From Octopus sinensis (taxonomy: Eukaryota), in assembly GCF_006345805.1 (NCBI RefSeq), contig NC_043002.1, positions 33,542,001-33,606,000 of the forward strand: DNA of 64,000 bases, written 5' to 3'. The notes beneath the pieces were generated by a model. That model saw nothing but the letters and a program-made list of their open reading frames with translations. It was not told where the DNA came from and did no database searches. Made by a program: the position numbers and the translations under genes. Below, one piece after another: positions 1,241 through 61,668 of the stretch. Each line of letters begins with the position of its first letter. The stretch's first letter is position 1.

Positions 1241-1709
1241 AAAGGTGGTGAGCTAACAGAATAGTTAGCGCGCTGGACGAAATGCTTAGCGGTATTTCGC
1301 CCGTCATTACGTTCTGAGTTCAAATTCCGCCGAGGTCGATTTTGCCTTTCATCCTTTCGGGGTCGATAAATTAAGTACTAGATAATTACTGCGGTCAATG
1401 TAATCGACTGTTCCCCTGCTCCAAAATTTCAGGTCTTGTGCCTTTAGTAGAAAGGATTATTGTTATTATTATTAAAGGAGGCGAGCTGGCAGAATCGTTA
1501 AGTACGCCGGGCAAGTGCTTAGCCGTATTTCGTCCATCTTTACGGTCTGAGTTCAAATTCTGCTGAAGTCGACTTTGCATTTCATCCTTTCGGGATCGAT
1601 AAATTAAGTACCAGTGAAACACTGGGGTCAACGTGATCGACTAGTCCCTTCCCCTCAAAATTTCAAGCCTTGTGCCTGTAGTAGAAAGGATTACTTTTAT
1701 TATCATTAA

Positions 1710-1770
<61 letters not shown>

Positions 1771-1792
1771 TATTATTATTATTATTATATTA

Positions 1793-1834
<42 letters not shown>

Positions 1835-2299
1835 AGGTGGTGAGCTAACAGAATAGTTAGCGCGCTGGACGAAATGCTTAGCGGTATTTCGCCCGTCATT
1901 ACGTTCTGAGTTCAAATTCCGCCGAGGTCGATTTTGCCTTTCATCCTTTCGGGGTCGATAAATTAAGTACTAGATAATTACTGCGGTCAATGTAATCGAC
2001 TGTTCCCCTGCTCCAAAATTTCAGGTCTTGTGCCTTAGTAGAAAGGATTATGTTATTATTATTAAAGGAGGCGAGCTGGCAGAATCGTTAAGTACGCCGG
2101 GCAAGTGCTTAGCCGTATTTCGTCCATCTTTACGGTCTGAGTTCAAATTCTGCTGAAGTCGACTTTGCATTTCATCCTTTCGGGATCGATAAATTAAGTA
2201 CCAGTGAAACACTGGGGTCAACGTGATCGACTAGTCCCTTCCCCTCAAAATTTCAAGCCTTGTGCCTGTAGTAGAAAGGATTACTTTTATTATCATTAA

Positions 2300-2959: not shown

Positions 2960-3087
2960 TTCCTCGGCCCCTTAAAAACTCAGCTCTATTAGTCTTCTAC
3001 TTCTTATACCAAGCAGAAAAAATGATATATATATGTGTATATCAATATATATATGTATATATATGTATATATATGTATAATATGTAT

Positions 3088-3122
<35 letters not shown>

Positions 3123-3150
3123 GCATGTATGTATATATATATGTATATGC

Positions 3151-3181
<31 letters not shown>

Positions 3182-3272
3182 CACATATATATATATATAT
3201 ATTTGTGTAGGTATATATATGTACACACATATATATATATGTGAGTATATAAGTATATGTATGCATACATAT

Positions 3273-3305
<33 letters not shown>

Positions 3306-3653
3306 TTACATATAAATATATATCTATGTATATATATATATACATACATATATACATATATATATATATACATACACACACATAAATATATATATATATA
3401 TATCAGTGAAGAAATAATAATTCTCTTTCAGTATAATTCATTTATTATTTACTTTTACATATATTTATTTATCTATTTATTTATTTATTTATTTTCATTA
3501 TTTCTCGTTGGTCCCGCAGCCTCCTGTAAATATATCCTATATTTTGACGGGGTAAATTTCAGAGATTGGGGAGAAGTTTCTCAAAAATAAACCTTCCCAA
3601 GGCAACACAGTAAATTATAATTTGTTATTATTATTATGATTATTATTATTATG

Positions 3654-3704
<51 letters not shown>

Positions 3705-3977
3705 ATTATGTGTGTCCCAGAGCTGCTTCGGTCGCATTTTGCAACATTTACATCTAATTTTTTAATCATTAATGTTTTAATTTTTATATCCTTGATTTTT
3801 TTCTTGATTTTATTTTTATTCTCATGGTTTATAATTTTATTTATTATGGACTTTTTTCTAGCTTTTTCAGATTTGTGCTCCAGTCTAAAAACTTGCATTT
3901 TTTTATGTGTGTTTATGCGCGTGCCCGTGTATATGTGCATGTAAGAATATGCATGTACATACGGATATGTATATATA

Positions 3978-4037
<60 letters not shown>

Positions 4038-4245
4038 GTGAGTGTGTGTATATATATATATATATGTATATATGTATATATATATGTATATATATATATA
4101 TATATATAGACATATATATATATATATACATTTCTATATATAAACATACATATGTATATATATATATATATATAATTATACATACATACATTTTATATAT
4201 ATATATGCATGCATGTATAATGCATATATACATATACGTACAACC

Positions 4246-4331
<86 letters not shown>

Positions 4332-4632
4332 ATATATAGCAACGTAACATATTTGTTCTTTCTTATAAAAAGCTTCAGTTGGTAACCTCCAAATGTGATT
4401 TTTTAGAGTAGCCCTCTCTTTTTCTTTTGCTTATTAATATTATTTTTCTTTATATTCTGAATATCTGAATAATTTCAATAATTTGCTGTTTATTTATTTC
4501 TTTTTATCATTTTAATTTATTGAGAAAGAAAATCTCAAGAGAAAGCCCCCTAACATCCAATCCTTATTCCTTTCTTGACAACTTATTTGCCTTTTTTAAG
4601 TTCTAACTCATTCTTGCCATTTTTTTAAAACG

Positions 4633-11566: not shown

Positions 11567-12831
11567 CGAGGGACGTTCAATAAGTAATGCCCCTGATCCA
11601 TTTGCAGTTGTTTGATCTAGCTTGAATTTTTCATGTGCAATTATATATATAGATTAAATGGCAAATTACAGCTTTGAACTAATTGTAGTTTCTTATTTAG
11701 AGGTGTTTGAACTGAGTCAAGTGTGAAATGGAGGCTGTTGAGTGCCGAGCAGTGATCCGGTTTTTGTATTTGAAAGGACGCACACCACGGGAGACTTTTG
11801 ATGAAATGAAAGTAACTTATGGTGATGATGCCCCATCATATGACCTTGTAAAACGCTGGCATCGTGAATTCAAACATGGTCGGAACTCTGTGGAAACAGC
11901 TCCCAGATCTGGTCGCCCCCCTTCTGCCATTGATGAGGCATCTGTCCGTCAAGTTGAGGCTGCCATTTTGGAAGATCGACGCATAACTAGTCGCCAAATA
12001 GCCCATGAGGTCAAGATTAGTATCGGGTCTGTGGAAACTATCATTCATGTCCATTTGCATATGCAAAAGGTGTCTGCCAGATGGATTCCCAGATTGCTCA
12101 CACCTTTCCAGAAGCAAGAACGCGTCGAGTGCTCGAGGATGAATTTGGAGATGTGTCAAGAAGATGAGTCAAACTTTTTCAAAAGACTGACTACACAGGA
12201 TGAAACCTGGGTCCATCACTATGATCCAGAGACCAAAGCCCAGTCAATGCAGTGGAAGCACCGTGACTCACCTCATCCAAAGAAGGCAAGGGTGCAGTCC
12301 TCCGCTGGCAAGGTCATGCTCACAGTCTTCTGAACAGATTTCCTGGCAAAGGGTACCACAATTACAGGAGCCTATTATGCTTCACTTTTGAGGAAATTAA
12401 GAGAAGCTATCAAAATCAAGAGGCGGGGCAAGATCACAAGAGCATCCTCCTCCTGCAGGACAACGCTCTGGTCAACAACTCGCGTGTCGCCAGATCAGAA
12501 GCACAGGCGTGCGGCTATGAACTCCTACCCCATCCCCCCTACTCTCCTGACCATGCACCCTCTGATTTTCATTTCTTCCCAGCCATGAAGTTGTTTTTGA
12601 AAGGAAAGCGTTTCCCAGATGATGCAGCCTTGATTTCTGAAGTCACGTCGTGGTTGGAGGACCAAGCTGGGGTCTTCTACAAAAACGGTCTCCAGAGCTG
12701 CATCAAACGATGTGAGAAATGCGTAATTCTGGGTGGTTCCTATGTAGAAAAAGACTAATAACTGTGCCAAGTTTCGTTGCTCTACTGCTATGGGAGGTGG
12801 GTCAGGGGCATTACTTATTGAACGCCCCTCG
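11567..12831 (+). mobile_element. Mariner (DD34D) transposon, full-length ends, defective transposase
   Basis: TA TSDs; TIR CGAGGG(A/G)CGTTCAATAAGTAATGCCCCTGA; ORF 11728-12333 (HTH, TQDETW, AGKVM) then deletion and frameshifts. Confidence 0.97.
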
Positions 12832-13679: not shown

Positions 13680-15560
13680 ATCTCTTAATTTCATCTTGTA
13701 TTGCCAGATCTAAACCGTTGCCCGGGAGTTGTAGAAAGTAGCTGCTACTTTAAAAATAGAATCCGTATTATATGTGGTGTTCCTGAATGATTTGATATTT
13801 TAAAAGTTGTTTTTTTTTAGTGTGATCTTCCCTGGAATTTTGCTGGGGGATTTTTCCAGTCCCGTTTTGATAAACACAAGACACCCGATTACTCTGGCAT
13901 AGTTCAAGTCCTACGTTTTAGAGATATCAATATCAAATTCTTTATGTCGAAACAGTTTTTTCTTTAAGCTTAACTGAGATATGCTGGTATTGTCACATCA
14001 ACCAGCATGCAGGTTTTTATCACTTTTTAATTGTAATATCAGGTGTGTTTGCTTTAATTTCCCAATCTATCTGCATTGGCATGTCCCATAAGATGGTAAG
14101 GTTACCATTTATGGTAACTGTTTCTGGTTTATTTTCATACTCTTTCTCAGACATTTTGAAATCATATTCCCTACACATTTTCCAGTGTAGGCATACTGGT
14201 GTCTGCTGGCGGTTGATATAATGTGAACGGTGGTCTTTTCAAATGTTCTCAATATTTTTCTGTGCCATCGTTGAAGATGCAGTGATGTAAACCGACGCTT
14301 AGAGTTTGTTTTCGGGCAGCGATGATAAAGCTATCCGTTTCTATCTTGCATCCAATATCTTTGAATCATTTAGTTGTCTGTTGTTGGCCAACATCTACCT
14401 TTTTAAGCCTTTTTGGATATTTGCCACGCATAACTTTCTTTTTACTGTCTTTTGCTTATTCTTTGTAGCCCTGATGTACCGCTTTTGTTTTAATCTATAG
14501 GCAAAAAATTGTCGAGTTTTTATTTTGTCTTAATTCAGTGATATACAGTTTTTGTGAGAATTTTCTTCACATTTGATTGGATGTAGTTTCTTTTGCTTAC
14601 CTGATGTTTGATAATTTACAAAAAATAGTAACATGATACGTAGAAATACGTATCAGTGATTAGGTAGTTTCGTTCAAGATGTATCAAACGTTCACCTCTC
14701 TCTGCTTTTGATGGCTAAACACTATCAACATTTTGCTTTTGAATGGTACGTGTTGGCTATTATCAGCATTTTCCTTGTTTTAGTAACTAGTTTTTTTTTT
14801 AATCATTCAGTGTTCAATTTACTGTATTAAAACTGAGTGACCGTATGTATAGGAAAACTACTGATAGATTCATATCGGTCAGATGCTTTTAGTTCAGTCC
14901 TTAGTATCAATCTAACTCTCCTGTAATATTCTTTTTGTATTTTAATCTTTCATGACAGAAAGCTGTATGTCATCTCTTTCCTTTATTCCTAGGTATTACC
15001 TTCATGTGTCTTTCTTATGAAGTTCCTTGATTTTTGTGTTGCTGTTAAGGTGTAATTTTGATGTTACAGTAAGCGCATATTTATTGCATGTAGCTTTAGC
15101 ACATCTACGTAATCTGAACGCTATTGCATTACCATTACTGATCCTCTTCACAGTGATTAGTAGATCACCTGACGGATATCATTGCTGGCGAAGGTTTTCA
15201 GATAGCCCATATAAAACATATGACTAAAATATTGACGAGCTGTTTATAATTCTTCCTTGCTGTAGTCAACTACTCATGGGCTTGACAAAATATCTTTGTT
15301 GTTGTTGTCTAGCTCCAGTTAAGATCATGCCGTCCTTCCCTGAGATATTGCGAATAAAGGGTGACATTATCTAATTTGTTCTCCTTTTTCAATTAGGTAG
15401 GTTGTAATTTGAGAAAGATTAAGTTGCTCTTCACAAAGAGTAACCATGCCAAATCACCCGATATCATTGAAGATTTTCATTGATCTATTTTGCAATGATA
15501 TAACATCTATTACTCCTGTTCATCTTATATCTAGGTGAACTGGAGTAATCGATGTCATAT
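13680..15560 (-). mobile_element. Second, older R4/Dong-like LINE remnant (RT thumb to RLE)
   Basis: Degenerate K.ET..FIIAA..Q.L, HWDMP, ANTPDI and GT.HI.R motifs; 3' end abuts (TAA)n at 13619-13678; 5' boundary approximate. Confidence 0.7.
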
Positions 15561-16256
15561 TGAATCTGTTGAAATATGACTTCAAATTAATTTAATTTTC
15601 TGTAATTTTTTTTCTCAATTATTTTCTCCTAATTATCTTGCTCACTTATTTTTCAGCAATCAGAACCGCAAGTCTTGTCTTTCTTCATATATTTTAAACT
15701 GATCCTATCACATTTTTACATTTTATCAATCATCATTTTGAAACGTTATTGCAGGCGTCAAAGTTTATCAGAACGAGGTTGTAGCCTCGTTTTAAAGTTT
15801 ACTGCAGTTACCTATTGCATCCTTTCATTATAAGGTTTATTTTTATGCTTTAGTTATATTTTAGTTGCTCTTTTCTGGCAATAAATGAATACCTGAAGAT
15901 TCCTTCTCTACAACCTTGATATATCCAGTAGGACATCACAATCGCTTCATTATCATATAAAAAAACCGTGACTACCCTTGTCATCGCAACATTACAACTA
16001 TGACATACTTCTACTGTAACAGAATTTCATCACAACGTTTTACTATTTAACTCATGACTACAAAGCAATACATGCCTTGAATTTGTGATAATCATATCAT
16101 ATTCCAAACTGGACAACAATATATAATTTTCAGCTATTTAATACCAGCGTATACACAAACCCACTGCAAATATTTCAGGTCAGCAAACATTTATTTCCAC
16201 TACACAAAAGTATACTAAATATTTCATTGCGTTTGCTTTTAATATGTTGTCTTTAC

Positions 16257-19200
16257 TTAGCTTTTGTTTCGAAAACATCTCAAAATTACAGAACGGAAAG
16301 ATTTTGAAACAAAACTGTACAAAAAGGCATTTATAGAATGCTGTGTAAAACCAAGAGCCATAAATACACTATCTAAAAGATCGCTTAATCCATAGCGAAC
16401 CCACGTTAATACATGTTGTATCATTAGTGGTAATTCAAAGATAAATTTGCAAATTATTATGGTAAAAAGCATGACGTTAATCTGTCGAAATTGTTGACTT
16501 CTATCTTCACGTGTGAGTGTATTTCGAATCCTGCTCTGTTGCCTCAGATGGATGATAATTAATATATTCAGTATGACAGTGGCTGATGTTGGAATAAGCC
16601 ACCCGTTAAACATTGTTATTAGTATAACCAAAATATTATGAGTTTGTTTAGATTTAACGCATTGGTCATTATTATAGGACCTCATGCCGAGCTGAGAGAA
16701 ATTAAGCATTATCTCAACTAGAAAGCAAACAACCACTGTAGTCATAACTTTGGATTTTGTGATGTAGATTTTAGCTTTCAATGGAAACTTGACCGCAATA
16801 AACCGTTCTGCTGACATCATAGCAATTGCCCAAGCCGATGTAGATTTGACAAAAACTTTCAGATAATGAAATGTCTTGCACATGGTGAAATTTAGGTTCG
16901 ATATTTTCCCTCCAAAGAAATAAATATAAAAATCGCTGTCAAAAAATACAATTATACCTGTAAGCATTTCAATTGTAGAAAGGAACACTGGTATATAAAA
17001 AGCCACTTCGTTTTTAAACTCCGTCGATCTAAAGACAAGAACAGAGATGGTGTTGCCAATTATTCCAGTAAATAAAATAGCTGGTTGAATTATAATATCT
17101 ACCATGTTAAATGTTTTATTTAAATCAACAGCTTGTGTCAAATTTACCGTTGAGGAATTAACATTCTCCAACTGCTTTGGTAATTCGGTAATATTAGAAA
17201 ACCCCAAAATTGTTTCCTTTGAAGAACGCAATTGTGTTGTGGATTCTTTTGATGTAACCACAGCTGAGGAGTGAATCAAGGACGAAGTTATCAAATTTGG
17301 AGTGGTTGGGTCGTTGGACGCGTTAGAAAAAGACTGAATCGTCTTTTGTGATGTTAACTGCTGACTGCTTTTTAAATCCCTTTTTATTAATTTGTGAATA
17401 AGAGCAGAATTAGTTGACTTAACATTAAATAATAATTTCCTGCCGGTGAACGAAGAAAATATTTCCTCTAAAGACTTGATTCGACGCCGAGCGAAATGCT
17501 TAGCGGTATTTCGCCTGTCTTTACGTTCAGAGTTTAAATTCCGCCGAGGTCGACTTTGCCTTTCATCCTTTCGGGGTCGATAAGTTAAGTACCAATTGTA
17601 TACTGCGGTCGATATATTGGACTGGCCCACCTCCTCAAAAATTTCGAGCCTTGTGCCTAGAGTAGAAAACAATAATAAATTAATTGAAAATTTACATTGA
17701 CTGGTCTGGATTGGAGAATTGTTTCCAACTGATTTCTGAAAATCTGAGTTCGAATTTGTCCAGGAAATAAATGGAATGGTGTTATATTTGAAAATTAAAC
17801 GAGTTATTGGAAAAAGAACTAAGAATCTACCTGTGATTAAGATAGTTATGTATTTTGATTTTTTCTTGATTTGATGATATGCATATCTGAAAATTTTGCA
17901 ATTCCAAAATACTTTTGGTCTTCGATGAACAAGATTAGATCTACAGATGACCAGTATGAAAGATCTATACTTCGAACGAAATTCGAAACGAATTAAAATA
18001 TTTGAAACTAGGGAAGAATACTTTGGCAAAAAGATTACTTCGTAGTTGTGTTTCGGAATAAATGGTGTTTCTTTAAATTTCAAATTTTCCTTCCGAAATA
18101 AAAATGTCAATAATTTTGGTAAAGTTATTTTATATTGAAGAGAAGATATTGGTTGTTCCTTATTCGATGTCAGAACTGTTGCATGGTTACTAGTAAACAT
18201 TAATGAAGGATTCTTATTGATCTGAATAGAACTATGGTGAATAGGTTTGTGGATTGTGAGTAAGCGTGTTATAAATGAACAACTGGACGCTTGAGAGGTT
18301 TTTCCGGTAGAAAGCTTGTTAGTAGTTCCTGGTGAGTTTACAGGTGAACCAGGATTGACAATAAGTTTCACGTTATTACTCGAGGACGCTTCTGCTATAC
18401 CGAGCGTTGTATGTTCTGGTAAATGTTTGCTACCAGTATCATCTACAAATATACTTGTATCTGTAATTTTAACGTGTTCATGACTTTCAGGTGCCACACT
18501 GATCTTGGAATATTCGGGTGGTTTTATATTCTTGCTACCTTCTGTCACCAGAAAGTTTGTTACATTATTTGGTAATACTTCTTCCAAAACCGGTAACCCA
18601 GTATGGATTTCAGAGTCTGAGTTAATATTCTGTTTCTTCTTTAGCATCAAATCGCAGTCTAGCATATATTTCGCTACGTTTTCCAAAACTTTTAAATCTG
18701 AAAGATAAAGTTTCAGCGTTGATTTGGCAGTGACGAAATTCTGTACTTTAAATTTAAAATTTCGGAAGTTATTGTTGAGCATTGCAGTAAATATAGAACA
18801 AATTTGAAAAGTCCAATTATATTTATAATAAGCCTGAAATCTTTCCGCAAGATTTTGGCTGTTCTTTGTTAGAAAATATTTCATTTGTTTATTGACTGGC
18901 TTTACTTGCAAGTCCTCTTTGATACCATTATGAAACTTTAGCACTTTATTTTGCAGTTGTTTTTTACAAAAATATATCATTTCCTCAGTCGATCTTTGAT
19001 CTAAATTGTTTCTTTGACAATTCATATGTTTTCTGTAGAATTTAGAAAATATTTCGAAAATTAATTGTTTCTGTTTAACACTGTTTATATCCATATCTAC
19101 GTAGATATTTCTAAATATTGCCAAATCTGAAGATATTCTTTTCCGGTTGTTTACCAACCTGCTCGAATATTTCTCTCCGTCTGAAATAATAATATTCTTT

Positions 19201-19328
19201 TTTGCTGGAGTTTTTAATATATTCTTATTGGCAACAACCATATCCTTATTATTTGTTAAATTGGAAGTTTTCCAACAGTGCACACCCACTGTTAACTTGA
19301 TTAGAAGAAGTAGATCCAGGAACAACAT
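16257..19328 (-). CDS. Single-coding-exon class A (rhodopsin-like) GPCR, FMRFamide/peptide-receptor-like, with signal peptide and ~740-aa N-terminal region
   Basis: Uninterrupted 3072-nt ORF from ATG 19328. The ORF track starts at a GTG at 19331; an acceptor-like atttcag ends at 19331, 2 nt before the ATG. The N-terminus MLFLDLLLLIKLTVGVHC looks like a signal peptide. The 7TM part (17105-16257) has GN (TM1), C3.25, ERF (DRY equivalent), ECL2 Cys, P5.50, P6.50 and N..LY (TM7). A cluster of NxS/T sequons precedes TM1. The 7TM is near-certain; translation of the whole N-terminus is likely but unproven. Confidence 0.85.
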   Translation of the reverse strand: MLFLDLLLLIKLTVGVHCWKTSNLTNNKDMVVANKNILKTPAKKNIIISDGEKYSSRLVNNRKRISSDLAIFRNIYVDMDINSVKQKQLIFEIFSKFYRKHMNCQRNNLDQRSTEEMIYFCKKQLQNKVLKFHNGIKEDLQVKPVNKQMKYFLTKNSQNLAERFQAYYKYNWTFQICSIFTAMLNNNFRNFKFKVQNFVTAKSTLKLYLSDLKVLENVAKYMLDCDLMLKKKQNINSDSEIHTGLPVLEEVLPNNVTNFLVTEGSKNIKPPEYSKISVAPESHEHVKITDTSIFVDDTGSKHLPEHTTLGIAEASSSNNVKLIVNPGSPVNSPGTTNKLSTGKTSQASSCSFITRLLTIHKPIHHSSIQINKNPSLMFTSNHATVLTSNKEQPISSLQYKITLPKLLTFLFRKENLKFKETPFIPKHNYEVIFLPKYSSLVSNILIRFEFRSKYRSFILVICRSNLVHRRPKVFWNCKIFRYAYHQIKKKSKYITILITGRFLVLFPITRLIFKYNTIPFISWTNSNSDFQKSVGNNSPIQTSQCKFSINLLLFSTLGTRLEIFEEVGQSNISTAVYNWYLTYRPRKDERQSRPRRNLNSERKDRRNTAKHFARRRIKSLEEIFSSFTGRKLLFNVKSTNSALIHKLIKRDLKSSQQLTSQKTIQSFSNASNDPTTPNLITSSLIHSSAVVTSKESTTQLRSSKETILGFSNITELPKQLENVNSSTVNLTQAVDLNKTFNMVDIIIQPAILFTGIIGNTISVLVFRSTEFKNEVAFYIPVFLSTIEMLTGIIVFFDSDFYIYFFGGKISNLNFTMCKTFHYLKVFVKSTSAWAIAMMSAERFIAVKFPLKAKIYITKSKVMTTVVVCFLVEIMLNFSQLGMRSYNNDQCVKSKQTHNILVILITMFNGWLIPTSATVILNILIIIHLRQQSRIRNTLTREDRSQQFRQINVMLFTIIICKFIFELPLMIQHVLTWVRYGLSDLLDSVFMALGFTQHSINAFLYSFVSKSFRSVILRCFRNKS
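17484..17678 (+). mobile_element. 5'-truncated SINE (family A) lying antisense and in frame inside the GPCR ORF
   Basis: cgccgagcgaaatgcttagcggtatttcg...gaggtcgactttgcctttcatcctttcggggtcgataa...ccttgtgcctagagtagaaa matches the intergenic/intronic copies at 1242-2282, 46090-46495 and 60301-60531. Confidence 0.95.
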
Positions 19329-20799
19329 CACTGAAATATGTTTGAATTGAGATAATAAAATTAAAACAATGAAAACATTAAAATATTAGAATTACAAGGT
19401 ACATAAGATATTTGATGTAGTAAAAACCACATCAGGTCAGAGCATAAGAAGGAAAACGTGAAAGAAAAACTAATATTTAATTAGTTATATTAAGTACAAG
19501 ACAGTGTTTGAAATTACTAGGATATTGAATAGACTCACTTATAAGTTTACAATTACGTGAGGAATAAATCTAACCTAAACTTAGTCATTGAAAAAGAATA
19601 CCACGTGACAATTTCAGGGCCTAAGATGAAAGAGTGAAAGAAATTATCAAATTACAGTTAAGAGAACGTGTGTAAAATACAATATACACAAAAGACATTG
19701 TAAAAACAGCATAAATATTAAAGAATCTACATGTATAGCATATTTGGGACTATCTGTAAGATTTGGTCCAACCATACTTACTTATAGTTAATGATAAAGA
19801 TTGTTATTTAGAATATAATCAACCCTTATATAAGGTGTGAAAGTGTGTAGCCTATTGGCTAGAGAGCTAGACTTATCATCGTTAGGCCATACGTTAGATT
19901 CTTACGCGGAGTCTTCGAGCAAAGCACCCTCTTCACGTTGCTCCGGTACACTCAGTTGGAAATTAGAACTCATGATATCTGGGAGTTCACTGGACAACGG
20001 ATTAGCGTCCCGTTCTGTGAAATAATCTTGTTTATCTGAGCTTCAGTGTCTTGTAAATTCAGATAAGTTTGGTTTTATGAGCCTGTTGGTTGGAATTCAC
20101 ATTACATTTAAGATAAATGGAATGCCGAAGCCATCGTCCGTAGCTCCACGTGAAACCCGGGTTTGCTGTTGCAGCCGGTCTCCTTTGCGTCTGAGGTTGG
20201 CTGGCTCACCTCGATCACGGCATGGTTGCGGCGTGGATTGCGAAGCGGCGTCGGTGGACCGGTCGAGCCCGTAGGGTTTCTTAAAAGTACGGGCGGCAGA
20301 AAACCGCACGAGGTAGAGCGATAAGGGGTCCAAATTTTAAATTTTTAATTCACCTGAAGAAAACGGTTTTCTTTTTCAATGATGTTATCAAATTATTCAT
20401 TAATAAAAAAGCGTTTCTAAAACAATTGTCGTGAACCTTTTATCCCATCTTCGTTCTTATTTTATGCGAACACCATTTCTGGTTCCTTCCCTATGTTGTA
20501 TATGGAACTTACATTGGGACGTGAAACTACATGTCGGTATGCATGAGTATATATTTTCGTGCACATCAATATTTACATGTATGCGTATATTTGTATGTGT
20601 AAGTGTATGAATATGTCTATATATTATGGGTATATACAGGTGTGTTTGTATATGGTATACACCAAGATATGCAGATCTCGATCCTCACTAGATGTCCTCA
20701 GCATTAAGGTACTAGGGTTCAGAAGAATCTTAGAAATAATTATTTATATCCATATCTTTCTATCTATCTATTTATCTGCCTGTCTATATGCCTTTCTTT

Positions 20800-24334: not shown

Positions 24335-25304
24335 CGAGATTGTATCAAAAGGTTCCCGTACTAGTTATATTTAATAAGAAAATAACTTATTTAACAAAGT
24401 TTTAACATCATCTCCTTTGAAATAGTTATCTTGCGCAGCAATACACCTGTCCACGCGTTTCTGCCACTGTTGGAATCCGGCCTGGAAGTCGTTTTCCGGA
24501 AGCGATTCGAGGACCTTCTGCGATTCACTCTGAATCTCTACAACGGTGTTAAAACGGCGATTTTTAGCTACGTTTTCATCTTAGGGAAAAGATGGAAATC
24601 TGCAGGTGCTAAATCCGATGAACAGGGCAAGTGCGAAAGCGATACCATGTTATTTTCGGAGAGAAACTCACGAATGAGAAGAGCTCGGTGGCAGGGTGTC
24701 GTGAAGAATCCAATTCTTCGCACTCCATAGATTCAATCGCTTTCGTAGTATGTCCTTCCTCAAACGCTTCAAAACGTCGAAGTAGAACTCTCGATTGACG
24801 GTCTGGCCCTGCACAATGTCGCGGATGTCGAAAAACACGATGAGCATGCTCTCGATTGATCTGCGACTCTGTCGTGCTCTCTTCGATCGTGGAGATGAAA
24901 AACTCTTCCATTGTGATGACTGCTGCTTCGTTTCAGGGTCATAACTGTAGACCCAACTCTCGTCACCAGTGATAATCCTTTGAAAACATTGCTTACGAAC
25001 CATCGCCTCGTCGCCGTAAGCTTGCCGAAGTATGCTCAATGCCCCTGTGGCAGATTTACCAAGTTTAACGCAAAATTTCACGTTGGCTCTTTGTTTCAAC
25101 TTCTTGTCCATGACAAAAATCGCAGACTACAGCATACAGGTGATCACAAAAACGCAAATTTCACAACTTGCGAAGTAAACAGCGGTGTCACTTGGCACAC
25201 TGCCTCATAAAGGTCACTACTAGTTCTCACTACGCACGCAATCGTGTACTGCCATTTGTTGGCGCGCTACAGAACTAGGCCGGGAACTCTTTGAAACCAT
25301 CTCG
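24335..25304 (-). mobile_element. Mariner (different family), internally deleted
   Basis: TA TSDs; TIRs CGAGATTGTATCAAAAGGTTCCCG / CGAGATGGTTTCAAAGAGTTCCCG; ORF 24668-25111 (QRANVKFCVKLGKS..., ITGDESW, NWILHD). Confidence 0.92.
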
Positions 25305-29644: not shown

Positions 29645-29945
29645 CATAATTCCGCCGAGGTCGGCTTTACCGTTCATCCTTTCGGGGTCGATAAATTAAG
29701 TACCAGTGGAACGCTGGGGTCGATGTAATCGATAAGTATCCGCCCCAAATTTCAGGCCTTGTGCCTATCGTAGAAAAGATTATTATTAATATTATTATTA
29801 TCGTTGTTAAGGCGGCGAGCTGGCAGAATCGTTACCGCCCAGGACAAAATGCTTATCGGTATCAGAGTCGATGAAATAAGTACCAGATGGGCACAAAGGT
29901 CAATGTAATCGACTAAATTTACCTCTAATATAGCTGGCTCCTTGT
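29645..29945 (+). mobile_element. Two partial SINE-A copies
   Basis: aattccgccgaggtcggcttt... and aaggcggcgagctggcagaatcgtt. Confidence 0.8.
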
Positions 29946-31628: not shown

Positions 31629-32225
31629 AATTCTATCTGATGATAAATGTATACTCTACATAATTTTCTTTTTATCTATAGGAAAGTGTGCATGTATTTT
31701 GTATAGCAAGTCCATTTCCAGGTGAATGCAATAATGAACAATCAACAGTGTGAAAGTACAATAAATATCAGTATTGTTGTTTATCTTTAAAGGATTAGGG
31801 CAAAAAGTTTCCGCTTTGTGTAAATACGTTCAAATTAAAAAGTGGAACAATACAATGTCGGAAATATTATAACAGGAAAGGTAGAGAAAGAGGATGGTCA
31901 AAGAGAGAGTGGAGAACGAGATAGAGAGAGAGAGAGAGTTATAAACAACATGCATATATGCACCGATAATTTACAGGCATTAAAAGAAACCTATTCAATG
32001 ATAGCCAATCAAAATCCAATTTTAATGTTTTATATATACATACATACACACACACATACATACATACATGCATGCATGCATGCATACATACATACATACA
32101 TACATACATACAAACATACATACATACATACATACATGCATGCATACATACATGCATACATACATACATACATACATACATACATACATACATACATACA
32201 TACATGCATACACACATACATACAA
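31312..32225. repeat. (GATA)n (31312-31626) and (CATA)n (32030-32225) microsatellites
   Basis: Direct reading. Confidence 0.95.
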
Positions 32226-32560
32226 GCGTGGATGTGTGTTAAGAAGCTTGCTTCCTAACCATATGGTTCGTGGTTCAGTCCCACTGCGTGGAACCTTGGG
32301 AAAGTGTCTTCTACTATTGCCTAGGGCCGGCCAAAGCCTTGTGAGTGGATTTGGTAGATAGAAATTGAAAGCTCATCGTGTGTATATATGTGCCTATGTC
32401 GCGCGCGTACGTGCGTGTTTATTTATATATGCGTATCTTTGTGTCTAAATTTGTCCCTCTACCATTGCTTAACAACCGATGTTGGTGTGTTTAAGTCCTT
32501 ATGATAGCGGTTCGGCAAAAGAGACCGATAGAAGAAGGACTAGGCTTACAAAGAACAAGT
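32226..32560 (+). mobile_element. tRNA-derived SINE family B
   Basis: gtgttaagaagcttgcttcctaacc...ccttgggaaagtgtcttctacta...ggttcggcaaaagagaccgatag. Confidence 0.85.
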
Positions 32561-33954: not shown

Positions 33955-34335
33955 TTTTATTTTATTTTCATGTCATTTGACTGCGGCCATGCTGGAGTAC
34001 CGCCTTTAGTCGAACAAATCGACCCCTATGGCTTGTTCTTTGTAAGCCTAGTACTTATTCTATCGGTGTCTTTTGCCGAAAAGCTAGGTTATGGAGACGT
34101 AAAGACACCAACATCGGTTGTCAAGTGATGGGGGGGCAAACCCATACACACAAAGATACGCACGCACACACACACACGCACGCACACACACACATATATA
34201 TACGACGGGCTTCTTTCAGTTTCCGTCTACCAAATCTCCTTTGGTTGGCCCGTGGCCATAGTTGAAGAGACCTGCCCAAGGTTCCACGCAGTAGAACTGA
34301 ACACGGAACCATGTAGTTGGTAGGCAAGCTACTTA
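33955..34335 (-). mobile_element. tRNA-derived SINE family B
   Basis: Reverse complement of the same family, with an internal (CA)n. Confidence 0.85.
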
Positions 34336-34383
34336 CCAAAAACCTCTCCTGTGCCTATATATCTATATAACATATGATATTTG

Positions 34384-34451
<68 letters not shown>

Positions 34452-34524
34452 CACAAACACACAGTTATATATACATATATGTATATAAAGCAAAACAGGG
34501 AGTGATGATGACGACGACGACGAC

Positions 34525-34587
<63 letters not shown>

Positions 34588-35699
34588 GGTGGTGGTGATG
34601 ATGGTGTATTTAGTGTGGTAGCCAATTGAAGGGTATTAGAAAGGGATCGTGTATGAAAAAAATAGCAAAGCAGTAAGGGTAAGAGATTTGAAATAAAGGG
34701 CCCATGAAAACCGTTCATGCGTACATGGTTAAATTCACATAAGTATGAACACATATACGAACATAAGCATACATGCTTGTATGTATGCATGCGTCTATGT
34801 ATATATTTTTTTGTCTGCATGCTCATATGTATATATCCATAAGAGTATATAATCATATTCAGTATTCGCCCCACAGTGTATGTTTATAGTCGTAAACGAA
34901 TAGTCCTTGTATGCGCGTATTACCGAGAGTGTGCGTGTATGTATGAGTGTGTGTATCTATGTGTATGTGTGTCAGTGTCTGTGTATCTGTATACATAAAT
35001 CCGCTCCAGCAAACCGTGATCAAAAACTGTGCTTCATTAGGAACTCATCAAACGGCAATAGAATAACAAGATAACCCGATTATTCTTGAACAAATAAATA
35101 TAGAAATCGGAGATAATTATATTTCGTAGAACAATGTGTAACGATGATGGTGCAGAACGGGGAATATAGTTGGGTTGATAGTTGTAAGGAAAAAAAATAC
35201 AATTTGCAGGTAGCTGTGGGGTATGGGCGTTGTTTATAGCGGTGATGATAAAGCATTGCGGATATAGTTATCGCAATAGTTGTGGTGTAGAAATATAGTC
35301 GAAGTTGTAACTGACTGTGATGTATGATTCATGGCGTACGGTGTCTATTGTCTAGAGTGGAGGATATAGTTTTGGCGCTGGTTAACTGTTGTATATAAAT
35401 GTTATTGGGGTGTTGGTTTACTATGGTGTATTTTGGTAATGATGTGGAGTAGAAGACATAGTTGGGGTGATGCTTCACCGTGGTAACGAAATATGATTGG
35501 TGTGGTTGTTGACTCTAATGTATGGTGGACGGGGAAGTGTATGTGATACACTCGGGTGATAGTGGTGATAGAAATATGGAAATATGTGGTAGTTGAGTGT
35601 GGTGGGTAGCTGTTAGATATAGGTGGTGATGCTCTTGATATATGGTTCGTAATATGGCCGACTGTGAAAATACGATTTCATAAGTTTTAATACTCAAGG

Positions 35700-36240: not shown

Positions 36241-36294
36241 TGCAATTGTTCATACATTGTAGTAGAAAATATCTGTGGGCTAATGAAGTTCATG

Positions 36295-36300
36295 ATATTT

Positions 36301-36363
<63 letters not shown>

Positions 36364-36399
36364 CATTTGTATATATATGTATATATGTGTATATTTATA

Positions 36400-36449
<50 letters not shown>

Positions 36450-36488
36450 GTATATATATATGTATATATATGTATGCATGTATATATA

Positions 36489-36519
<31 letters not shown>

Positions 36520-36548
36520 AATGTATATATATATGTATATATGTATGC

Positions 36549-36584
<36 letters not shown>

Positions 36585-36612
36585 GTATATATATATGTAT
36601 ATATATGTATGC

Positions 36613-36680
<68 letters not shown>

Positions 36681-36690
36681 GTATATATAG
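36295..36690. repeat. (TA)n/(TG)n microsatellite
   Basis: Direct reading. Confidence 0.95.
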
Positions 36691-37099
36691 GAGAAATATA
36701 AAAGGTGCAAAAATGCTCGAGAATCAGTATACACCACATGGCAAAATTATGAAGCGAAAATATGTCGAAAACATACAAAAGCGGGGAAGAGAAATGCCTT
36801 CATTTCACAAAGTTTTAATACCTCTTTATAAAAAAATATGTATACATATTTTATGGATGGTAAAAGTCTGATAAAATGTAGTGATATCCAGCCGGTTTTC
36901 GCTATTTACATTAGCTTTTCAAGAGTCATTGTAAAGTAATAATTCCTTGAGATAAGGAATCACGCCATTTTGCATTTCTTGAGAAGTAAAAATGAATGGA
37001 AAGAGTGGATAAAGGGAGTCAACAGGTGGTAAGGGGGACAACTACCTCCTCAGCATCATTGAATAGTGGTAAATAAATTTGATTTTGAAATAGCAAAGC

Positions 37100-38640
37100 G
37101 TAGGGATCAGGTTGTCAAGTTTGTATATTAAGGTGTGGTCTGTTCTTTTGTATAAACAGATTTTCCTTGTTTAGGCGTTCTTGTAAGGAGATTGAATCCT
37201 TGTATTGGTATAATGGGAAAATATGAAAATTCGGTGTTTTATTTCTTGCGCATATGTCAATATGTTCGCTCAGAGCTATCTGCCTGTATTGAAGAAAATG
37301 AATCTGTTCTTTATGTAGTGTAACTCTGCATCTCAAAGTAAGGCTCGTTTGGCCTACATAATTGTGGCCACAACCTGAGCAGGCTACGACATAAATTAGT
37401 TTCTGAGAGGCACATGTGAAGTTGGTTTTAATTAAATATTTTTCTCCTTGCTGGAATGTGAGCCTTAGGTTTGGACATGTACCCCAATTAGGTCGTCCGC
37501 ATTTCTTTAGCTGTTGGTATCGTATGTGTTGACTACAGTTTTGCATTTGTTAGATGTTTCTGAAGTGATTTGCGTTGTCTTTTGCATTTGAGGAGTTTAT
37601 GTGTATTCAGAATGTTGTTCCTTTTTGGATCGTGAATGAGCAGAGGGAGATTTTGTACGATTGTGTTGTATGCTTCATTGTTTCTAAGGGTTGTGGGTTG
37701 ATATGAATGGGAGTGATTTAAAGTGAGGCATGGTGTTGTGTTTTGTTGTCTTTAATGTGTTTGTGTCTAGTTCCATGGTCTATCAATGCGGGTGGGTATT
37801 GGCGTTCAATGAGTGTTATTTTGAGGTCCTGTAGGCGAAATTCCCGAGTAGCTGTATCAGATACAATTGTACAGATGTTTTGCTAGATTGAATGGGATAT
37901 TTATTTTGAGCTGAAAAGGAGATACTGTTTTGAATATGTTGGTTTGTGGTAGATGTCGGTGGCAATTTCATTGTTGGATTTTTTTATAATCAAAATGTCC
38001 AGAAATGGGAGCTGTTCATTGCTATATTCCATTGTAAATTGAATATTGGCGTTTATATTGTTCAGTGAAGGATATCATAGGTTTCATTCCTGATGATAAA
38101 ACAATCGTCTAAGTACCTTCTCCAGTTTTCTCTTATATACTGGTGGAATAGGGATCCAAATTTTTGGAGCGAAAATTCATATAGAGTAGATTCAAAGAAA
38201 CCCATTATTAGGTTCGCAAGGACAGTCGTTGCTTTTGTTCCCATCGCAATACCGCATTTTTGGTGATAGCATGTTTCATCGAATAGGAAGTAATTGTTTT
38301 GTAGGATGAACTTCAGAGATTCAATGACAAAAATCTAGGTTTATGGGGTCCGGGGGAACTTCGGAGTATTTTTCTAACCAGAACTTTATTGCCTCTATTC
38401 CGTAGTCATGTGGAATGTTGGTGTATAGGTTGATGACATCGAAGGAAACTAATAGTGCTTCTTCGTTGGTGGTTTTTGGTAGATCCTCTTGCATGTCCAT
38501 ATCGTCTTTAATGAAACATTTTATATATGTTTTCATCAACACAAGATCTATGTGATTTAAGGTGAGCCTGGTGACTGAACATTTTGGGTTCTTGCAATTT
38601 ACTATCGTTTGGTGAGCCATATTGCAAATTCAAGATGATT
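37100..38640 (-). mobile_element. Penelope-like retroelement (RT + GIY-YIG), frameshifted
   Basis: LVSFDVINLYTNIP, MGT...LANL.MG.FE, WRRYLDDCFII; GIY-YIG: LIYVVACSGCGHNYVGQT..LR.R...H...RL..E..FI....P.LN. Confidence 0.93.
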
Positions 38641-59500: not shown

Positions 59501-61621
59501 CAGACTTTTCTTCATCATTAAGGCCTTTTCCACATCCCATTGTTCTTAGAGAAGAGAGACGCAATCAGCGTGGCTCACCCAAAAACTGAAAAATCTGAAA
59601 TAAAAAAGGAAGGCCGTTACACGGAATAATGAAAACATAACAATGGCTTTACCATGGTTTGAAAATCAGCTAGGAAAAGTTTTATCAATATCGACTCGGA
59701 GAAAACCAAGAAATCCTAAGGCTCGCCGCCTTATATGTTAAACTTAATACACTACTAATGTTTGATGACCACCAGCTGGCATTTAGGTGACTAATTAACG
59801 CCACTCTGTGTAACACTTATTTTATCTATGTTGGGATCTGGAAATATATTCCTTTCTTTCCATCAGTTTTGGAGGCCTTTGAAAATTTCAGCTACATTTC
59901 TGCTTTTTACTAATTTCTTACAGAAAATGTAGTGTCTCTTCCCACATCACTAACCCACCAATACTAGTGACTATTCTTACTAACCATCACTATCCTAGTG
60001 ACTACCTTCATATATAAATTGCATTCAATATATCACAACTACATCGATTCTAGTGGCTATCCTTATTAGAAAGTTCTCTAACTTTAGAATCATAAGCATA
60101 CAGTACAACATTTTCTAAAATCTTCAGAATCGGCGACTTACCTTACCAGATGTCTTGATACCTTTTGAAAGACAGAGAAATGTTATCAACCAAATCAAGA
60201 AGAGACACAAGAGTAAAGGAGGTCGTACAGTTCCTATGTTGTTAACACTTGGTGACAGGTTCAATACATGACGCCTACATCGAGAATATAATAAAATATT
60301 TTATTCTTTATTGTCACAAGGGGCTAAACATAGAGGGAACAAACAAGGACAGACAAAGGAATTGAGTCGATTACATCGACCCCAGTGCGTAACTTGTACT
60401 TAATTTATCGAACCCGAAAGGATGAAAGGCAAAGTCGACCTCGGCGGAATTTCAACTCAGAACGTAACGGCAGACGAAATACGGCTACGCATTTCGCCCG
60501 GCGTGCTGAAGTTCTACCAGCTCGCCGCCTTTATGATATGATATGATATGATATGATATGATATGATATGATATGATATGAAAATGATATGATATATGAT
60601 ATGATATGATATGATATATGATATGATATGATATGATATGATATGATATGATATGATATGATATGATATGATATGATATGATATAATATAATATAATATA
60701 ATATAATATAATATAATAAATATAATATAATATAATAAATATAATGTAATGTAATGTAATGTAATGTAATGTAATGTAATGTAATGTAATGTAATATAAT
60801 ATAATATAATATAATATAATATTGTTAATGAATGATAGATTGTAAAGCTAATTTGAGTTGATGGAGTATTTACTTGGTTGCTAGATATACTGCAAACAGC
60901 AGTCAAACCTTACTCAAATCTCGCCCTACCAATTTTACGACGACACTGGATAATGAAATAGTTCTAGATAGACTATATCTTAAAATAAGATAGCATAGTC
61001 GAGAATGAAACACTTAGATTAAAGACTCATTCGCTCATAGGATTGTAGTGGATGAAATACATTTGATGAGAGATGATAAAGAACATCCGGTGACAACAAT
61101 AATTCGCACGCTCATCTCGACATTTCCGAGTTCCTGTTTTACCGCTCGCTTATCAGTTCCCTTAGTGGAGGACAAAACTCCTTGTGCTTGTAACTACATG
61201 GCCACACCAAATCATAATCATTTACTAGAAAATAATTTGGCAGAAAGCCACGGTTATAGACACGTTAATATTGATTTCACAAGGCCAGAAATGTCGGGAG
61301 GGAGTAAGTCGATTACATCGAGCCCAGTGCTCGACTGGTACTTATTTTATCGACCCCGAAAGAACTAAAGGCAAAGTCAACCTTGGTAGAATTTGAACTC
61401 AGAACGAGAAGGTGGATGAAATGCTCCTAAGCATTTTGCCCGTTGTACTAACGATTCTTTCAGCTCGTTGCCTTGTAGACATGCTAATATTAATAAAAAG
61501 GATATTTTACTTGTTAGCAATTCATGGAATAATAAATAGTAAAGAAAATTCCACGGGAACAGTATGAGAATATGAAAATAATGTTTTGCTCCATATGATA
61601 ATAGTAATAATAATAATAATA

Positions 61622-61668
<47 letters not shown>

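What the first reader, a model, noticed from the sequence alone, without database searches (positions are those of the whole stretch)
16257..19328. Intronless class A GPCR with a ~740-aa unassigned ectodomain
Seen: a single ~1023-codon ORF in very AT-rich DNA, far too long to be chance. It has a signal-peptide-like start, alternating basic/aromatic blocks and Ser/Thr/Pro-rich mucin-like stretches, a sequon cluster (NAS, NIT, NSS, NLT, NKT) before TM1, and then a complete 7TM. I recognise no LRR, LDLa, EGF, cadherin or GAIN motif and see few cysteines. Established: rhodopsin-family receptors usually have short N-termini, and the known large ectodomains are LRR/LDLa types. Inference: possibly an undescribed ectodomain architecture on a lophotrochozoan peptide/chemoreceptor-type 7TM.
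Basis: partly seen in the sequence, partly recalled or inferred. Interest (0 to 1): 0.8.

Follow-up and report, generated by a model that had tools for sequence, protein, structure and literature searches.

The report
Orphan receptor gene with long drifting leader
This is a real gene for a fast-evolving orphan rhodopsin-type receptor whose unusual 740-residue front end is kept readable by selection in two species. Most of that front end evolves like unconstrained spacer and includes a piece of a mobile element, so it is an oddity rather than a demonstrated new kind of sensor domain.

Summary
Window 16257-19328 (minus strand) is one 1023-codon ORF in about 33% GC DNA, ending in a complete class A 7TM (Pfam 7tm_1, E 3.9e-16). 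The 740-residue N-terminal extension matches no Pfam family, PDB chain or protein in the large libraries, apart from one orthologue and one embedded interspersed repeat.

The orthologue comes from five sequencing runs of a related taxon. It keeps the whole ORF open at about 14% nucleotide divergence. About 13 stops would be expected from the observed substitutions; none occur. All 11 indels are in frame. The Met next to TM1 is not conserved. The extension is therefore translated.

Constraint on the extension is weak. dN/dS is about 0.5 for aa 1-250 and about 0.9 for aa 251-740, against 0.49 for the 7TM. Replacements in the extension are no more conservative than random mutation. Codon-position composition is flat at aa 401-558. 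About 60 residues derive from a SINE-like repeat. A TM7-truncating frameshift allele is present in 3 of 5 sister-taxon runs.

AlphaFold was uninformative, and its 7TM control also failed.

Best reading: a lineage-restricted orphan class A receptor with a signal peptide, a weakly constrained head and a long unconstrained stalk. The ORF stays open because the 7TM has no start codon of its own. A new folded ectodomain is not shown.

The parts
16257..19328 (-). Complete ORF, 1023 codons plus the stop at 16257-16259, for an orphan class A GPCR with a 742-aa N-terminal extension
   Evidence: Orthologue P0001 is 74% identical over the full length.
19331..19336 (-). TTTCAG preceded by a T-rich tract, 2 nt upstream of the ATG and conserved in the orthologue. 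Possible splice acceptor of a 5'-UTR intron. An in-frame TAA lies upstream at 19386-19388.
   Evidence: Read from the sequence; no transcript data.
19272..19328 (-). Signal-peptide-like leader, aa 1-19 (MLFLDLLLLIKLTVGVHCW)
   Evidence: Kyte-Doolittle 19-residue mean of 1.79. The first 20 residues differ from the orthologue by one replacement and one 1-aa deletion. Not tested with SignalP.
18579..19271 (-). N-terminal 'head', aa 20-250. K/N/L-rich, modelled as helices, and the only part of the extension with dN/dS clearly below 1.
   Evidence: dN/dS 0.52, Fisher p = 0.007. 5.6 stops expected, none seen, P = 0.003. Replacements are not conservative. No Pfam or PDB match. AlphaFold pLDDT 36.
18129..18578 (-). 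Ser/Thr/Pro-rich stretch, aa 251-400, evolving neutrally at the amino-acid level
   Evidence: dN/dS 1.06. Composition S 15%, T 11%, P 7%.
17655..18128 (-). Phe/Ile/Leu/Lys-rich stretch, aa 401-558, with the same base composition at all three codon positions (non-coding-like) but no stops
   Evidence: dN/dS 0.78. For aa 251-558, 6.3 stops expected and none seen, P = 0.002.
17484..17674 (-). Copy of a roughly 190-bp interspersed SINE-like repeat read in frame (about aa 552-615). Most of it (153 + 9 nt) is missing from the orthologue.
   Evidence: At least 15 other copies in the window, on both strands. 17 unrelated predicted proteins in the public library match only this stretch. Family alignment.
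17103..17483 (-). Juxtamembrane Ser/Thr-rich region, aa 616-742, carrying the sequon cluster and M742 (17103-17105)
   Evidence: Four of five sequons conserved; M742 is Leu in the orthologue. Fragment P0010 from a third taxon continues open for 38 aa upstream of this Met, to its contig end.
16317..17042 (-). Rhodopsin-family 7TM core, aa 763-1004 (Pfam envelope)
   Evidence: dN/dS 0.49, p = 0.001. Replacements more conservative than random mutation, P = 0.008.

Best explanation
This is a genuine protein-coding gene for a lineage-restricted, fast-evolving orphan class A (rhodopsin-family) receptor of the chemoreceptor or peptide-receptor-like kind.

Proposed mechanism:
- Translation starts at the ATG at 19328.
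- A signal-peptide-like leader takes a 740-residue N-terminal extension across the membrane ahead of TM1.
- The extension has a weakly constrained, probably helical head (aa 20-250).
- The head is followed by a stalk of about 490 residues, strongly basic and rich in Ser/Thr, whose amino-acid sequence is free to drift. The stalk has absorbed a SINE-like element.
- The conserved sequons sit next to TM1.
- The stalk stays open not because its sequence matters but because the 7TM has no conserved start codon of its own. Any stop or frameshift upstream would abolish the receptor.

Shown here: the ORF is real; selection has acted against stops across the whole ORF; the pattern of constraint along the protein; the repeat-derived segment; the identity of the 7TM.

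Inferred: signal-peptide function, extracellular location, glycosylation, disorder of the stalk, and the idea that the open frame is maintained only because the 7TM depends on it.
For: - ORF and 7TM.
- One orthologue was found, in five runs, collinear with the window through both flanks.
- Re-placing the 279 observed N-terminal substitutions at random gives 12-14 stops, and 0 of 20000 simulations stay open. By segment: aa 1-250, 5.6 expected (P = 0.003); aa 251-740, 8.4 (P = 0.0004); 7TM, 4.4 (P = 0.008).
- All 11 indels in the extension are multiples of 3 in an alignment made on the DNA itself, with no codon or protein guide.
- M742 is Leu in the orthologue, which has no Met between residue 447 and TM1.
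- dN/dS: aa 1-250, 0.52 (p = 0.007); aa 251-740, about 0.9 (p = 0.5); 7TM, 0.49 (p = 0.001).
- Mean BLOSUM score of replacements against the random-mutation expectation: 7TM 0.34 vs -0.19 (P = 0.008); aa 21-250 -0.17 vs -0.17; aa 251-558 -0.56 vs -0.27.
- Flat codon-position composition at aa 401-558.
- Repeat-derived segment.
- The nearest non-orthologous relative, P0024, has TM1 starting at about aa 28, so the extension is a lineage-specific gain.
Against: - There are no transcript, ribosome or peptide data, so the start codon and the absence of splicing are inferred.
- CDS nucleotide identity (0.864-0.868) is no higher than in the proximal 3' flank (0.856). The gene as a whole is therefore only weakly constrained.
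- In the non-coding flanks, 6 of 10 indels are also multiples of 3. The indel argument is therefore worth only about 0.6^11, or 0.004.
- A net charge of +57 and a Phe/Ile/Leu-rich block are odd for a disordered extracellular stalk.
- A TM7-truncating allele is common in the sister taxon, so the receptor may be dispensable there.
- dN/dS comes from a single pairwise comparison by the Nei-Gojobori method.
Confidence: 0.6

Rival explanations
1. The extension, or at least its first 250 residues, is a genuinely new folded extracellular module. It would be taxonomically restricted and possibly of de novo origin, and would bind ligand or act as a tethered ligand held on a stalk above a class A 7TM.
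For: Aa 1-250 show dN/dS 0.52 (p = 0.007), the same as the 7TM. DSSP assigns long helices to aa 50-260 in both models. The leader and the blocks at aa 64-82 and 165-182 are nearly invariant. No homologue was found anywhere.
Against: Replacements in aa 21-250 are as radical as random mutation. Four of the nine Cys in the extension, including three of the four between aa 100 and 250, are not conserved. There is no significant amphipathic-helix signal, z = 1.3. pLDDT is 36. The rest of the extension is neutral and partly repeat-derived.
Confidence: 0.15
2. The gene is decaying. The open frame is left over from past function, and the locus is now drifting towards a pseudogene in a birth-and-death receptor family.
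For: Overall dN/dS is 0.64, and the CDS is no more conserved than its 3' flank. A 1-bp deletion that removes TM7 is present in 3 of 5 sister-taxon runs. Microswitch residues are non-canonical: E at 2.50, no W4.50, no CWxP, NAxxY in place of NPxxY. Pseudogenes are common among lophotrochozoan lineage-specific class A receptors (PMC11886862).
Against: The window copy is intact over all 1023 codons. About 17 stops would be expected across the ORF from the observed substitutions, and none are seen. 7TM replacements are significantly conservative. The unusual motif residues are shared by both species, so they are old features and not recent damage.
Confidence: 0.15
3. The mature receptor lacks most of the extension, either because an internal intron or alternative promoter is used or because translation starts near TM1.
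For: M742 lies 3 residues before TM1 in the window and in fragment P0010. Relatives have N-termini of about 27 aa. The middle of the extension looks like non-coding DNA.
Against: That Met is Leu in the orthologue, and no other Met is near. Aa 251-740 avoid stops (P = 0.0004), and all eight of their indels are in frame. Neither would be expected of an intron or a 5' UTR.
Confidence: 0.08

Closest known systems
Lineage-specific class A GPCR expansions of Lophotrochozoa, the chemoreceptor-like orphan rhodopsin-family genes described by Nath et al. 2025 (PMC11886862)
   Same: Divergent 7tm_1 core. The only relatives found are one orthologue, one fragment from a close taxon and one distant 30%-identical relative. 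The precomputed Pfam hits of those relatives include Srw and Srsx. Single coding exon, fast evolution, and a segregating loss-of-function allele as in birth-and-death receptor families.
   Different: No paralogue within the 64-kb window, so there is no tandem cluster here. The 742-aa N-terminus compares with about 27 aa in the nearest relative.
GPR37 / GPR37L1, class A receptors with a long, domain-less, signal-peptide-led N-terminus that is shed by proteases (PMC12315979)
   Same: A class A 7TM preceded by a signal peptide and a long N-terminal region with no recognisable domain. A conserved RKR at aa 62-64 could in principle be a processing site.
   Different: No sequence relationship was detected. 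This extension is about three times longer (the roughly 260-aa GPR37 N-terminus is quoted from memory), mostly neutral and partly repeat-derived. Processing is untested.
LGR and relaxin-family receptors, class A with LRR or LDLa ectodomains
   Same: A large N-terminal extracellular region on a rhodopsin-family core.
   Different: No LRR or LDLa match at E<=10. Few cysteines and no repeats.
Mucin-like stalks of adhesion GPCRs (EMR/CD97 type)
   Same: A Ser/Thr-rich, sequon-bearing spacer between a distal head and the 7TM.
   Different: The 7TM is class A, not class B2. There is no GAIN/GPS domain and no EGF modules.
Transposable-element sequence taken into coding exons (for example Alu or SINE exonisation)
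   Same: A SINE-like repeat contributes about 60 in-frame codons to the ORF.
   Different: Here the repeat sits inside a large existing coding exon; it is not recruited as a new alternatively spliced exon.

Membership tests
Rhodopsin-family (class A) GPCR, Pfam PF00001 | Significant full-length match to the 7tm_1 profile | tested here: met
   59.7 bits against a cut-off of 30.5; profile positions 7-260 of 260.
Rhodopsin-family (class A) GPCR, Pfam PF00001 | Seven TM segments alignable from TM1 to helix 8 with solved receptors | tested here: met
   Aligned to residues 36-303 of 5-HT2B (chain 9wng_R), E 1.7e-13, with 274 PDB sequences at E<=1. Hydropathy peaks are seen for TM1, 2, 4, 5 and 6.
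Rhodopsin-family (class A) GPCR, Pfam PF00001 | Conserved N1.50, the TM3-ECL2 cysteine pair, and P5.50 | tested here: met
   GN759, C817 with C890, and P913 in the alignment. All are invariant in the orthologue.
Rhodopsin-family (class A) GPCR, Pfam PF00001 | Canonical microswitches: D2.50, E/DRY, W4.50, CWxP, NPxxY | tested here: inconclusive
   E at 2.50, ERF, no W4.50, CKF in place of CWxP with the Pro five residues later, and NAFLY. These variants are shared with the orthologue. They are tolerated in many orphan and chemoreceptor-type members (own knowledge).
Lophotrochozoan lineage-specific class A expansion (PMC11886862) | No one-to-one orthologues outside a narrow lineage | tested here: inconclusive
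   Only P0001 (74%), the P0010 fragment (92%) and P0024 (30%) were found. The libraries hold few animal genomes, and the taxon was not identified.
Lophotrochozoan lineage-specific class A expansion (PMC11886862) | Tandem clustering of paralogues | tested here: not met
   tblastn of the 7TM against the window found no second copy. Only 64 kb could be examined.
LGR / relaxin-receptor type class A | LRR and/or LDLa modules in the ectodomain | tested here: not met
   No Pfam hit at E<=10 on any piece of the extension.
Adhesion GPCR | GAIN/GPS domain and a class B2 7TM | tested here: not met
   Only 7tm_1 matched. No GAIN, GPS or 7tm_2 hit.
tRNA-derived SINE (for the embedded repeat) | Short interspersed multi-copy element | tested here: met
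   At least 15 copies of about 140-200 bp on both strands of the window. Translated copies occur in 17 unrelated library proteins.
tRNA-derived SINE (for the embedded repeat) | tRNA-like head with A and B boxes, and a simple-repeat tail | tested here: inconclusive
   (AAT)n abuts one end of several copies. A B-box-like GAGTTCAAATTCC on the opposite strand was seen by eye only. ARAGORN and Rfam found nothing.

The most novel reading that the evidence does not exclude
The first 250 or so residues could be a new, taxonomically restricted extracellular module, possibly born de novo. It would be held on a long stalk that is free to vary and grew by accretion of non-coding and SINE sequence, and would work with a class A 7TM as a ligand-capturing or tethered-ligand device in an octopod-type sensory system. 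This would be a class A ectodomain architecture with no known counterpart, and a traceable example of a receptor gaining 2.2 kb of coding sequence.
Probability: 0.15. Interest if true: 0.65.

Novelty: new variant of a known kind. Interest (0 to 1): 0.35.

Why it matters
If the extension is translated, as the conservation of the open frame indicates, this is a class A receptor carrying about 740 residues with no homologue anywhere in the libraries searched. Most of that sequence is under selection only to stay readable, and part of it comes from a mobile element.

That makes it a clean natural case of two things. The first is how coding sequence can grow and persist when the only constraint is that it must not stop. 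The second is how such 'passenger' sequence might later be shaped into a domain.

For receptor biology the value is modest until expression, topology and ligand are known. The 7TM itself is one more orphan in a fast-turnover family.

Tried and rejected
- AlphaFold2 on the full length with the two-sequence alignment gave mean pLDDT 27.9, and the 7TM control also stayed below 40. On aa 1-260 it gave pLDDT 36. Both are uninformative, so no fold search was run, because low-confidence models give meaningless matches.
- Pfam on the whole protein and on three N-terminal pieces at E<=10 gave nothing credible. The only hit was sub-threshold, IstB_IS21 at 15.9 bits.
- A PDB profile search with aa 1-260 at E<=10 gave nothing.
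- An exhaustive HMMER search of 1.84 billion representative proteins with aa 1-740 found only the repeat segment and the P0010 fragment. Word-indexed searches with the full length, aa 1-558 and the 7TM found only P0001, P0010 and P0024.
- The idea that the extension is a degenerate second 7TM or contains internal repeats was rejected by BLASTP.
- The idea that another frame or strand is the real coding frame was rejected: 24-53 stops in each.
- The idea that the contigs L001-L005 are transcripts was rejected. They end in (GT)n and in a repeat, and are collinear with genomic flanks.
- The hydrophobic segment at aa 494-512 was considered as an extra TM helix and judged unlikely. It contains two Arg, and part of it is a 5-aa insert found only in the window.
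- Coding potential in the 3' flank was rejected.
- Charge-hydropathy and helical-moment calculations were indecisive.
- A literature search for the SRA run numbers, to identify the sister taxon, found nothing.
- Rfam and tRNA scans of the window were empty.
Full report

Yes. The ORF listing returns a single ORF at 16257..19331 on the minus strand, 1023 codons from the ATG at 19328. The surrounding DNA is 32-33.5% G+C. Shuffled versions of the aligned N-terminal DNA carry about 21, 21 and 8 stops in the three segments tested and were never open. The other five frames of the same DNA carry 24-53 stops.

Pfam places a full-length 7tm_1 domain at aa 763-1004, at 59.7 bits against a cut-off of 30.5. 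phmmer against the PDB aligns aa ~745-1020 with 5-HT2B, adrenergic, histamine, opioid, neurotensin, somatostatin, ghrelin and other class A receptors, best E 3.4e-13.

The residue-level alignment shows several canonical features: N1.50, the TM3-ECL2 cysteine pair, P5.50 and helix 8. It also shows several non-canonical ones: E at 2.50, ERF for DRY, no W4.50, no CWxP, and NAFLY for NPxxY.

- A hydrophobic leader (aa 1-19).
- Ser/Thr/Pro-rich and Phe/Ile/Leu/Lys-rich blocks.
- Five sequons before TM1.
- Few cysteines.
- No LRR, LDLa, EGF, cadherin or GAIN match.

**2. Related sequences**

The word-indexed search of 5.8 billion proteins found one relative of the full-length protein, P0001. It is 950 aa, 74% identical in the global alignment, and covers 99% of the query.

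P0001 and its cluster mates P0002-P0004 come from five Logan assemblies of runs SRR11869384, 385, 390, 391 and 394. The contigs L001-L005 are about 5.36 kb. They begin in a (GT)n tract and end in a repeat, so they are genomic contigs and not transcripts. They are collinear with window 19693-14303.

An exhaustive HMMER scan of 1.84 billion representatives with aa 1-740 found only two things:
- 17 unrelated short proteins, plus one 706-aa gene model, that match only aa ~550-620.
- P0010, a 319-aa fragment without a start Met, 92% identical, which begins at aa 705 and runs through the 7TM.

A third search with aa 1-558 again found only P0001. The 7TM alone additionally found P0024. It is 30% identical and 340 aa long, and its TM1 starts at about residue 28. 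It sits 7 kb from a second 332-aa 7tm_1 gene on a 355-kb ENA contig.

The extension therefore has no detectable homologue outside the orthologue, and the nearest other relative has an ordinary short N-terminus.

**3. Is the extension coding?**

The two species differ at 13.6% of aligned N-terminal nucleotides, 279 substitutions.

- Stops. I re-placed those substitutions at random on sites of the same base, keeping the substitution spectrum. This creates 12-14 stops on average, and 0 of 20000 replicates stayed open. By segment: aa 1-250, 5.6 expected (P = 0.003); aa 251-558, 6.3 (P = 0.002); aa 251-740, 8.4 (P = 0.0004); the 7TM, 4.4 (P = 0.008). The extension avoids stops as strongly as the receptor core.
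- Indels. An alignment made on the DNA itself, with no codon or protein guide, shows 11 indels in the extension, all multiples of three (3, 3, 9, 3, 15, 3, 15, 9, 153, 3, 3), and none in the 7TM. This argument needs care. In the non-coding flanks, 6 of 10 reliably aligned indels are also multiples of three, and the 3' flank is certainly non-coding, with 10-36 stops in every frame. The indel evidence is therefore worth roughly 0.6^11, or about 0.004, and not 3^-11.
- Start codon. It is Leu in P0001, which has no Met between residue 447 and TM1. A short form starting near TM1 cannot be the conserved product.
- Third taxon. P0010 stays open for the 38 residues upstream of that Met, up to its contig end.

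Taken together, the extension has been translated, or at least has had to stay translatable, throughout the divergence of these species.

**4. What kind of constraint acts on it?**

Nei-Gojobori dN/dS values, with Fisher tests of pN against pS and the mean BLOSUM62 score of replacements against the expectation from random mutation with the observed spectrum:

| Segment | dN/dS | Fisher p | BLOSUM62, observed vs expected |
|---|---|---|---|
| 7TM | 0.49 | 0.001 | 0.34 vs -0.19 (P = 0.008) |
| aa 1-250 | 0.52 | 0.007 | -0.17 vs -0.17 (aa 21-250) |
| aa 251-400 | 1.06 | 1.0 | -0.56 vs -0.27 (aa 251-558 combined) |
| aa 401-558 | 0.78 | 0.44 | see the row above |
| aa 616-740 | 0.81 | 0.55 | -0.22 vs -0.26 |
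| aa 251-740 pooled | about 0.9 | 0.50 | not computed |

Replacements are more conservative than random only in the 7TM.

Other observations point the same way:
- Aa 401-558 have essentially the same base composition at all three codon positions (A .39/.29/.37, T .35/.38/.36, G .10/.12/.11). This is what a frame constrained only against stops would drift to.
- Nucleotide identity is 0.864 in the extension, 0.868 in the 7TM, 0.856 in the proximal 3' flank and 0.78 in the 5' flank. The whole gene evolves close to the local neutral rate.
- All 11 indels make the window copy the longer one.

**5. The embedded repeat**

Window ~17484-17674 is a copy of an interspersed repeat. At least 15 further copies occur in the 64-kb window on both strands: 1278-2277, 29648-29790, 45731-46491, 51226-51558, 52379-52566, 56366-56608, 60365-60504 and 61278-61852. 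This is the stretch that hits unrelated library proteins.

In the family alignment the repeat begins TTTCTACTnnAGGCACAAGG and is abutted by (AAT)n. This suggests a SINE lying antisense to the ORF with an (ATT)n tail. A tRNA-like B box on the other strand was seen by eye only, and ARAGORN and Rfam report nothing.

The orthologue lacks 153 + 9 nt of this segment but appears to retain sequence resembling both of its edges. The insertion may therefore predate the split and have been followed by an in-frame deletion in the sister lineage. Alternatively, it may be a window-lineage insertion. I could not decide between these without an outgroup. Either way, about 60 codons of the 'ectodomain' are repeat-derived. 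No other part of the ORF is repeated in the window.

**6. Structure**

AlphaFold2 with the two-sequence alignment gave a mean pLDDT of 27.9 for the full length. The 7TM, which served as the internal positive control, also stayed below 40, so the run is uninformative. Aa 1-260 alone gave pLDDT 36.

DSSP on both models assigns long helices to aa ~50-260 and almost no regular structure to aa 260-740. At this confidence that is only a hint.

The helical hydrophobic moment of aa 60-260 is not significantly above shuffles (z = 1.3). The charge-hydropathy position is borderline, and the extension carries a net charge of +57. I did not run a fold search on such models.

**7. Population observation in the sister taxon**

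Three of the five runs (L002, L003, L005) carry a 1-bp deletion in a T5 run at L001 position 3147. It gives a 916-aa product that ends before TM7. The five contigs differ from one another at six further sites, so at least three individuals or haplotypes are involved.

A truncating allele at appreciable frequency fits the birth-and-death dynamics described for lineage-specific class A receptors of lophotrochozoans, which include many pseudogenes (PMC11886862).

**8. Surroundings**

- No second 7TM copy lies in the window.
- Immediately upstream of the ATG, both species have a T-rich tract ending TTTCAG|TG-ATG. This looks like a splice acceptor for a 5'-UTR intron. An in-frame TAA lies at 19386-19388.
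- The rest of the window is repeat-rich: Mos1/mariner transposase remnants, long microsatellites and SINE-like copies.
- The organism could not be identified with the tools available.

**9. Interpretation**

The best-supported reading (about 0.6) is as follows:
- The gene encodes a lineage-restricted orphan class A receptor whose translation starts 742 codons before TM1 at a signal-peptide-like leader.
- Aa 20-250 are under moderate constraint of unknown nature.
- Aa 251-~700 are a spacer whose sequence drifts freely and has absorbed repeat DNA. It must stay open because the 7TM has no initiation codon of its own.
- The conserved sequon cluster next to TM1 looks like the ordinary glycosylated N-terminus of a class A receptor.

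Rival readings:
- A genuinely new folded ectodomain or tethered-ligand head (0.15).
- A gene on its way to pseudogenisation (0.15).
- A mature product lacking the extension through splicing or internal initiation (0.08).

**10. Comparison with known systems, and verdict**

The 7TM passes the membership tests for the rhodopsin family, with several variant microswitches.

The protein works most like class A receptors with long, domain-less, signal-peptide-led N-termini such as GPR37 (PMC12315979). It also resembles the mucin-like stalks of adhesion GPCRs, but it is a member of neither group. It fails the LRR/LDLa and GAIN tests.

The novelty lies in the size of the extension, its lack of any homologue and its mode of evolution, not in a demonstrated new domain. 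I file it as a new variant of a known kind, with interest 0.35.

Noticed in passing
L001 pos 3147 (also L002, L003, L005); corresponds to about window aa 988-989, near 16360-16365: A 1-bp deletion in a T5 run truncates the orthologue before TM7 (916 aa against 950 aa). It is present in 3 of 5 sequencing runs of the sister taxon, so it is a common loss-of-function allele.
   Followed up: yes
window 1278-2277, 29648-29790, 45731-46491, 51226-51558, 52379-52566, 56366-56608, 60365-60504, 61278-61852: A SINE-like repeat family of about 140-200 bp, on both strands, often next to (AAT)n. The copies at 1278-2277 form two near-identical pairs (1278-1453/1870-2044 and 1504-1687/2094-2277), which suggests a duplicated block of about 590 bp.
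   Followed up: partly
window 16257-19328 versus L001 404-3256: All 11 indels in the coding sequence make the window copy longer than the orthologue. Either the window lineage is growing or the sister lineage is shrinking; the direction is unresolved without an outgroup.
   Followed up: no
window 15442-16256: The non-coding 3' flank is as conserved as the CDS (85.6% identity), and 5 of its 7 indels are multiples of three although every frame is full of stops. It may be a 3' UTR, and the genome may have a mutational bias towards 3-bp indels.
   Followed up: partly
window ~14821-15442: About 620 bp are present in the window but absent from the orthologous contig. This is an insertion or deletion in the distal 3' flank and was not characterised.
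   Followed up: no
window 11728-12333 (+) and 24668-25111 (-): Remnants of Mos1/mariner-type transposases (Pfam HTH_48 and Transposase_1).
   Followed up: yes
window 37115-37546 (-): A 143-aa ORF with a sub-threshold GIY-YIG match (19.2 bits against a 22.6 cut-off), possibly a fragment of a Penelope-like element.
   Followed up: partly
window 2972-4350, 31842-32258, 34329-34874, 36246-36701, 60514-60906: Long AT-rich microsatellite and minisatellite tracts that produce spurious 130-200-aa ORFs reading YIYIYI and similar.
   Followed up: no
L006 2184-3182 and 10001-11023: The nearest non-orthologous relative, P0024 (340 aa), lies 7 kb from a second 332-aa 7tm_1 gene on an ENA contig. This is a tandem pair of short-N-terminus receptors of the same broad kind.
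   Followed up: partly
window 19139-19147 (aa 62-64): An RKR tribasic motif is conserved in both species within the N-terminal head. It could be a proprotein-convertase site; this is pure speculation and untested.
   Followed up: no
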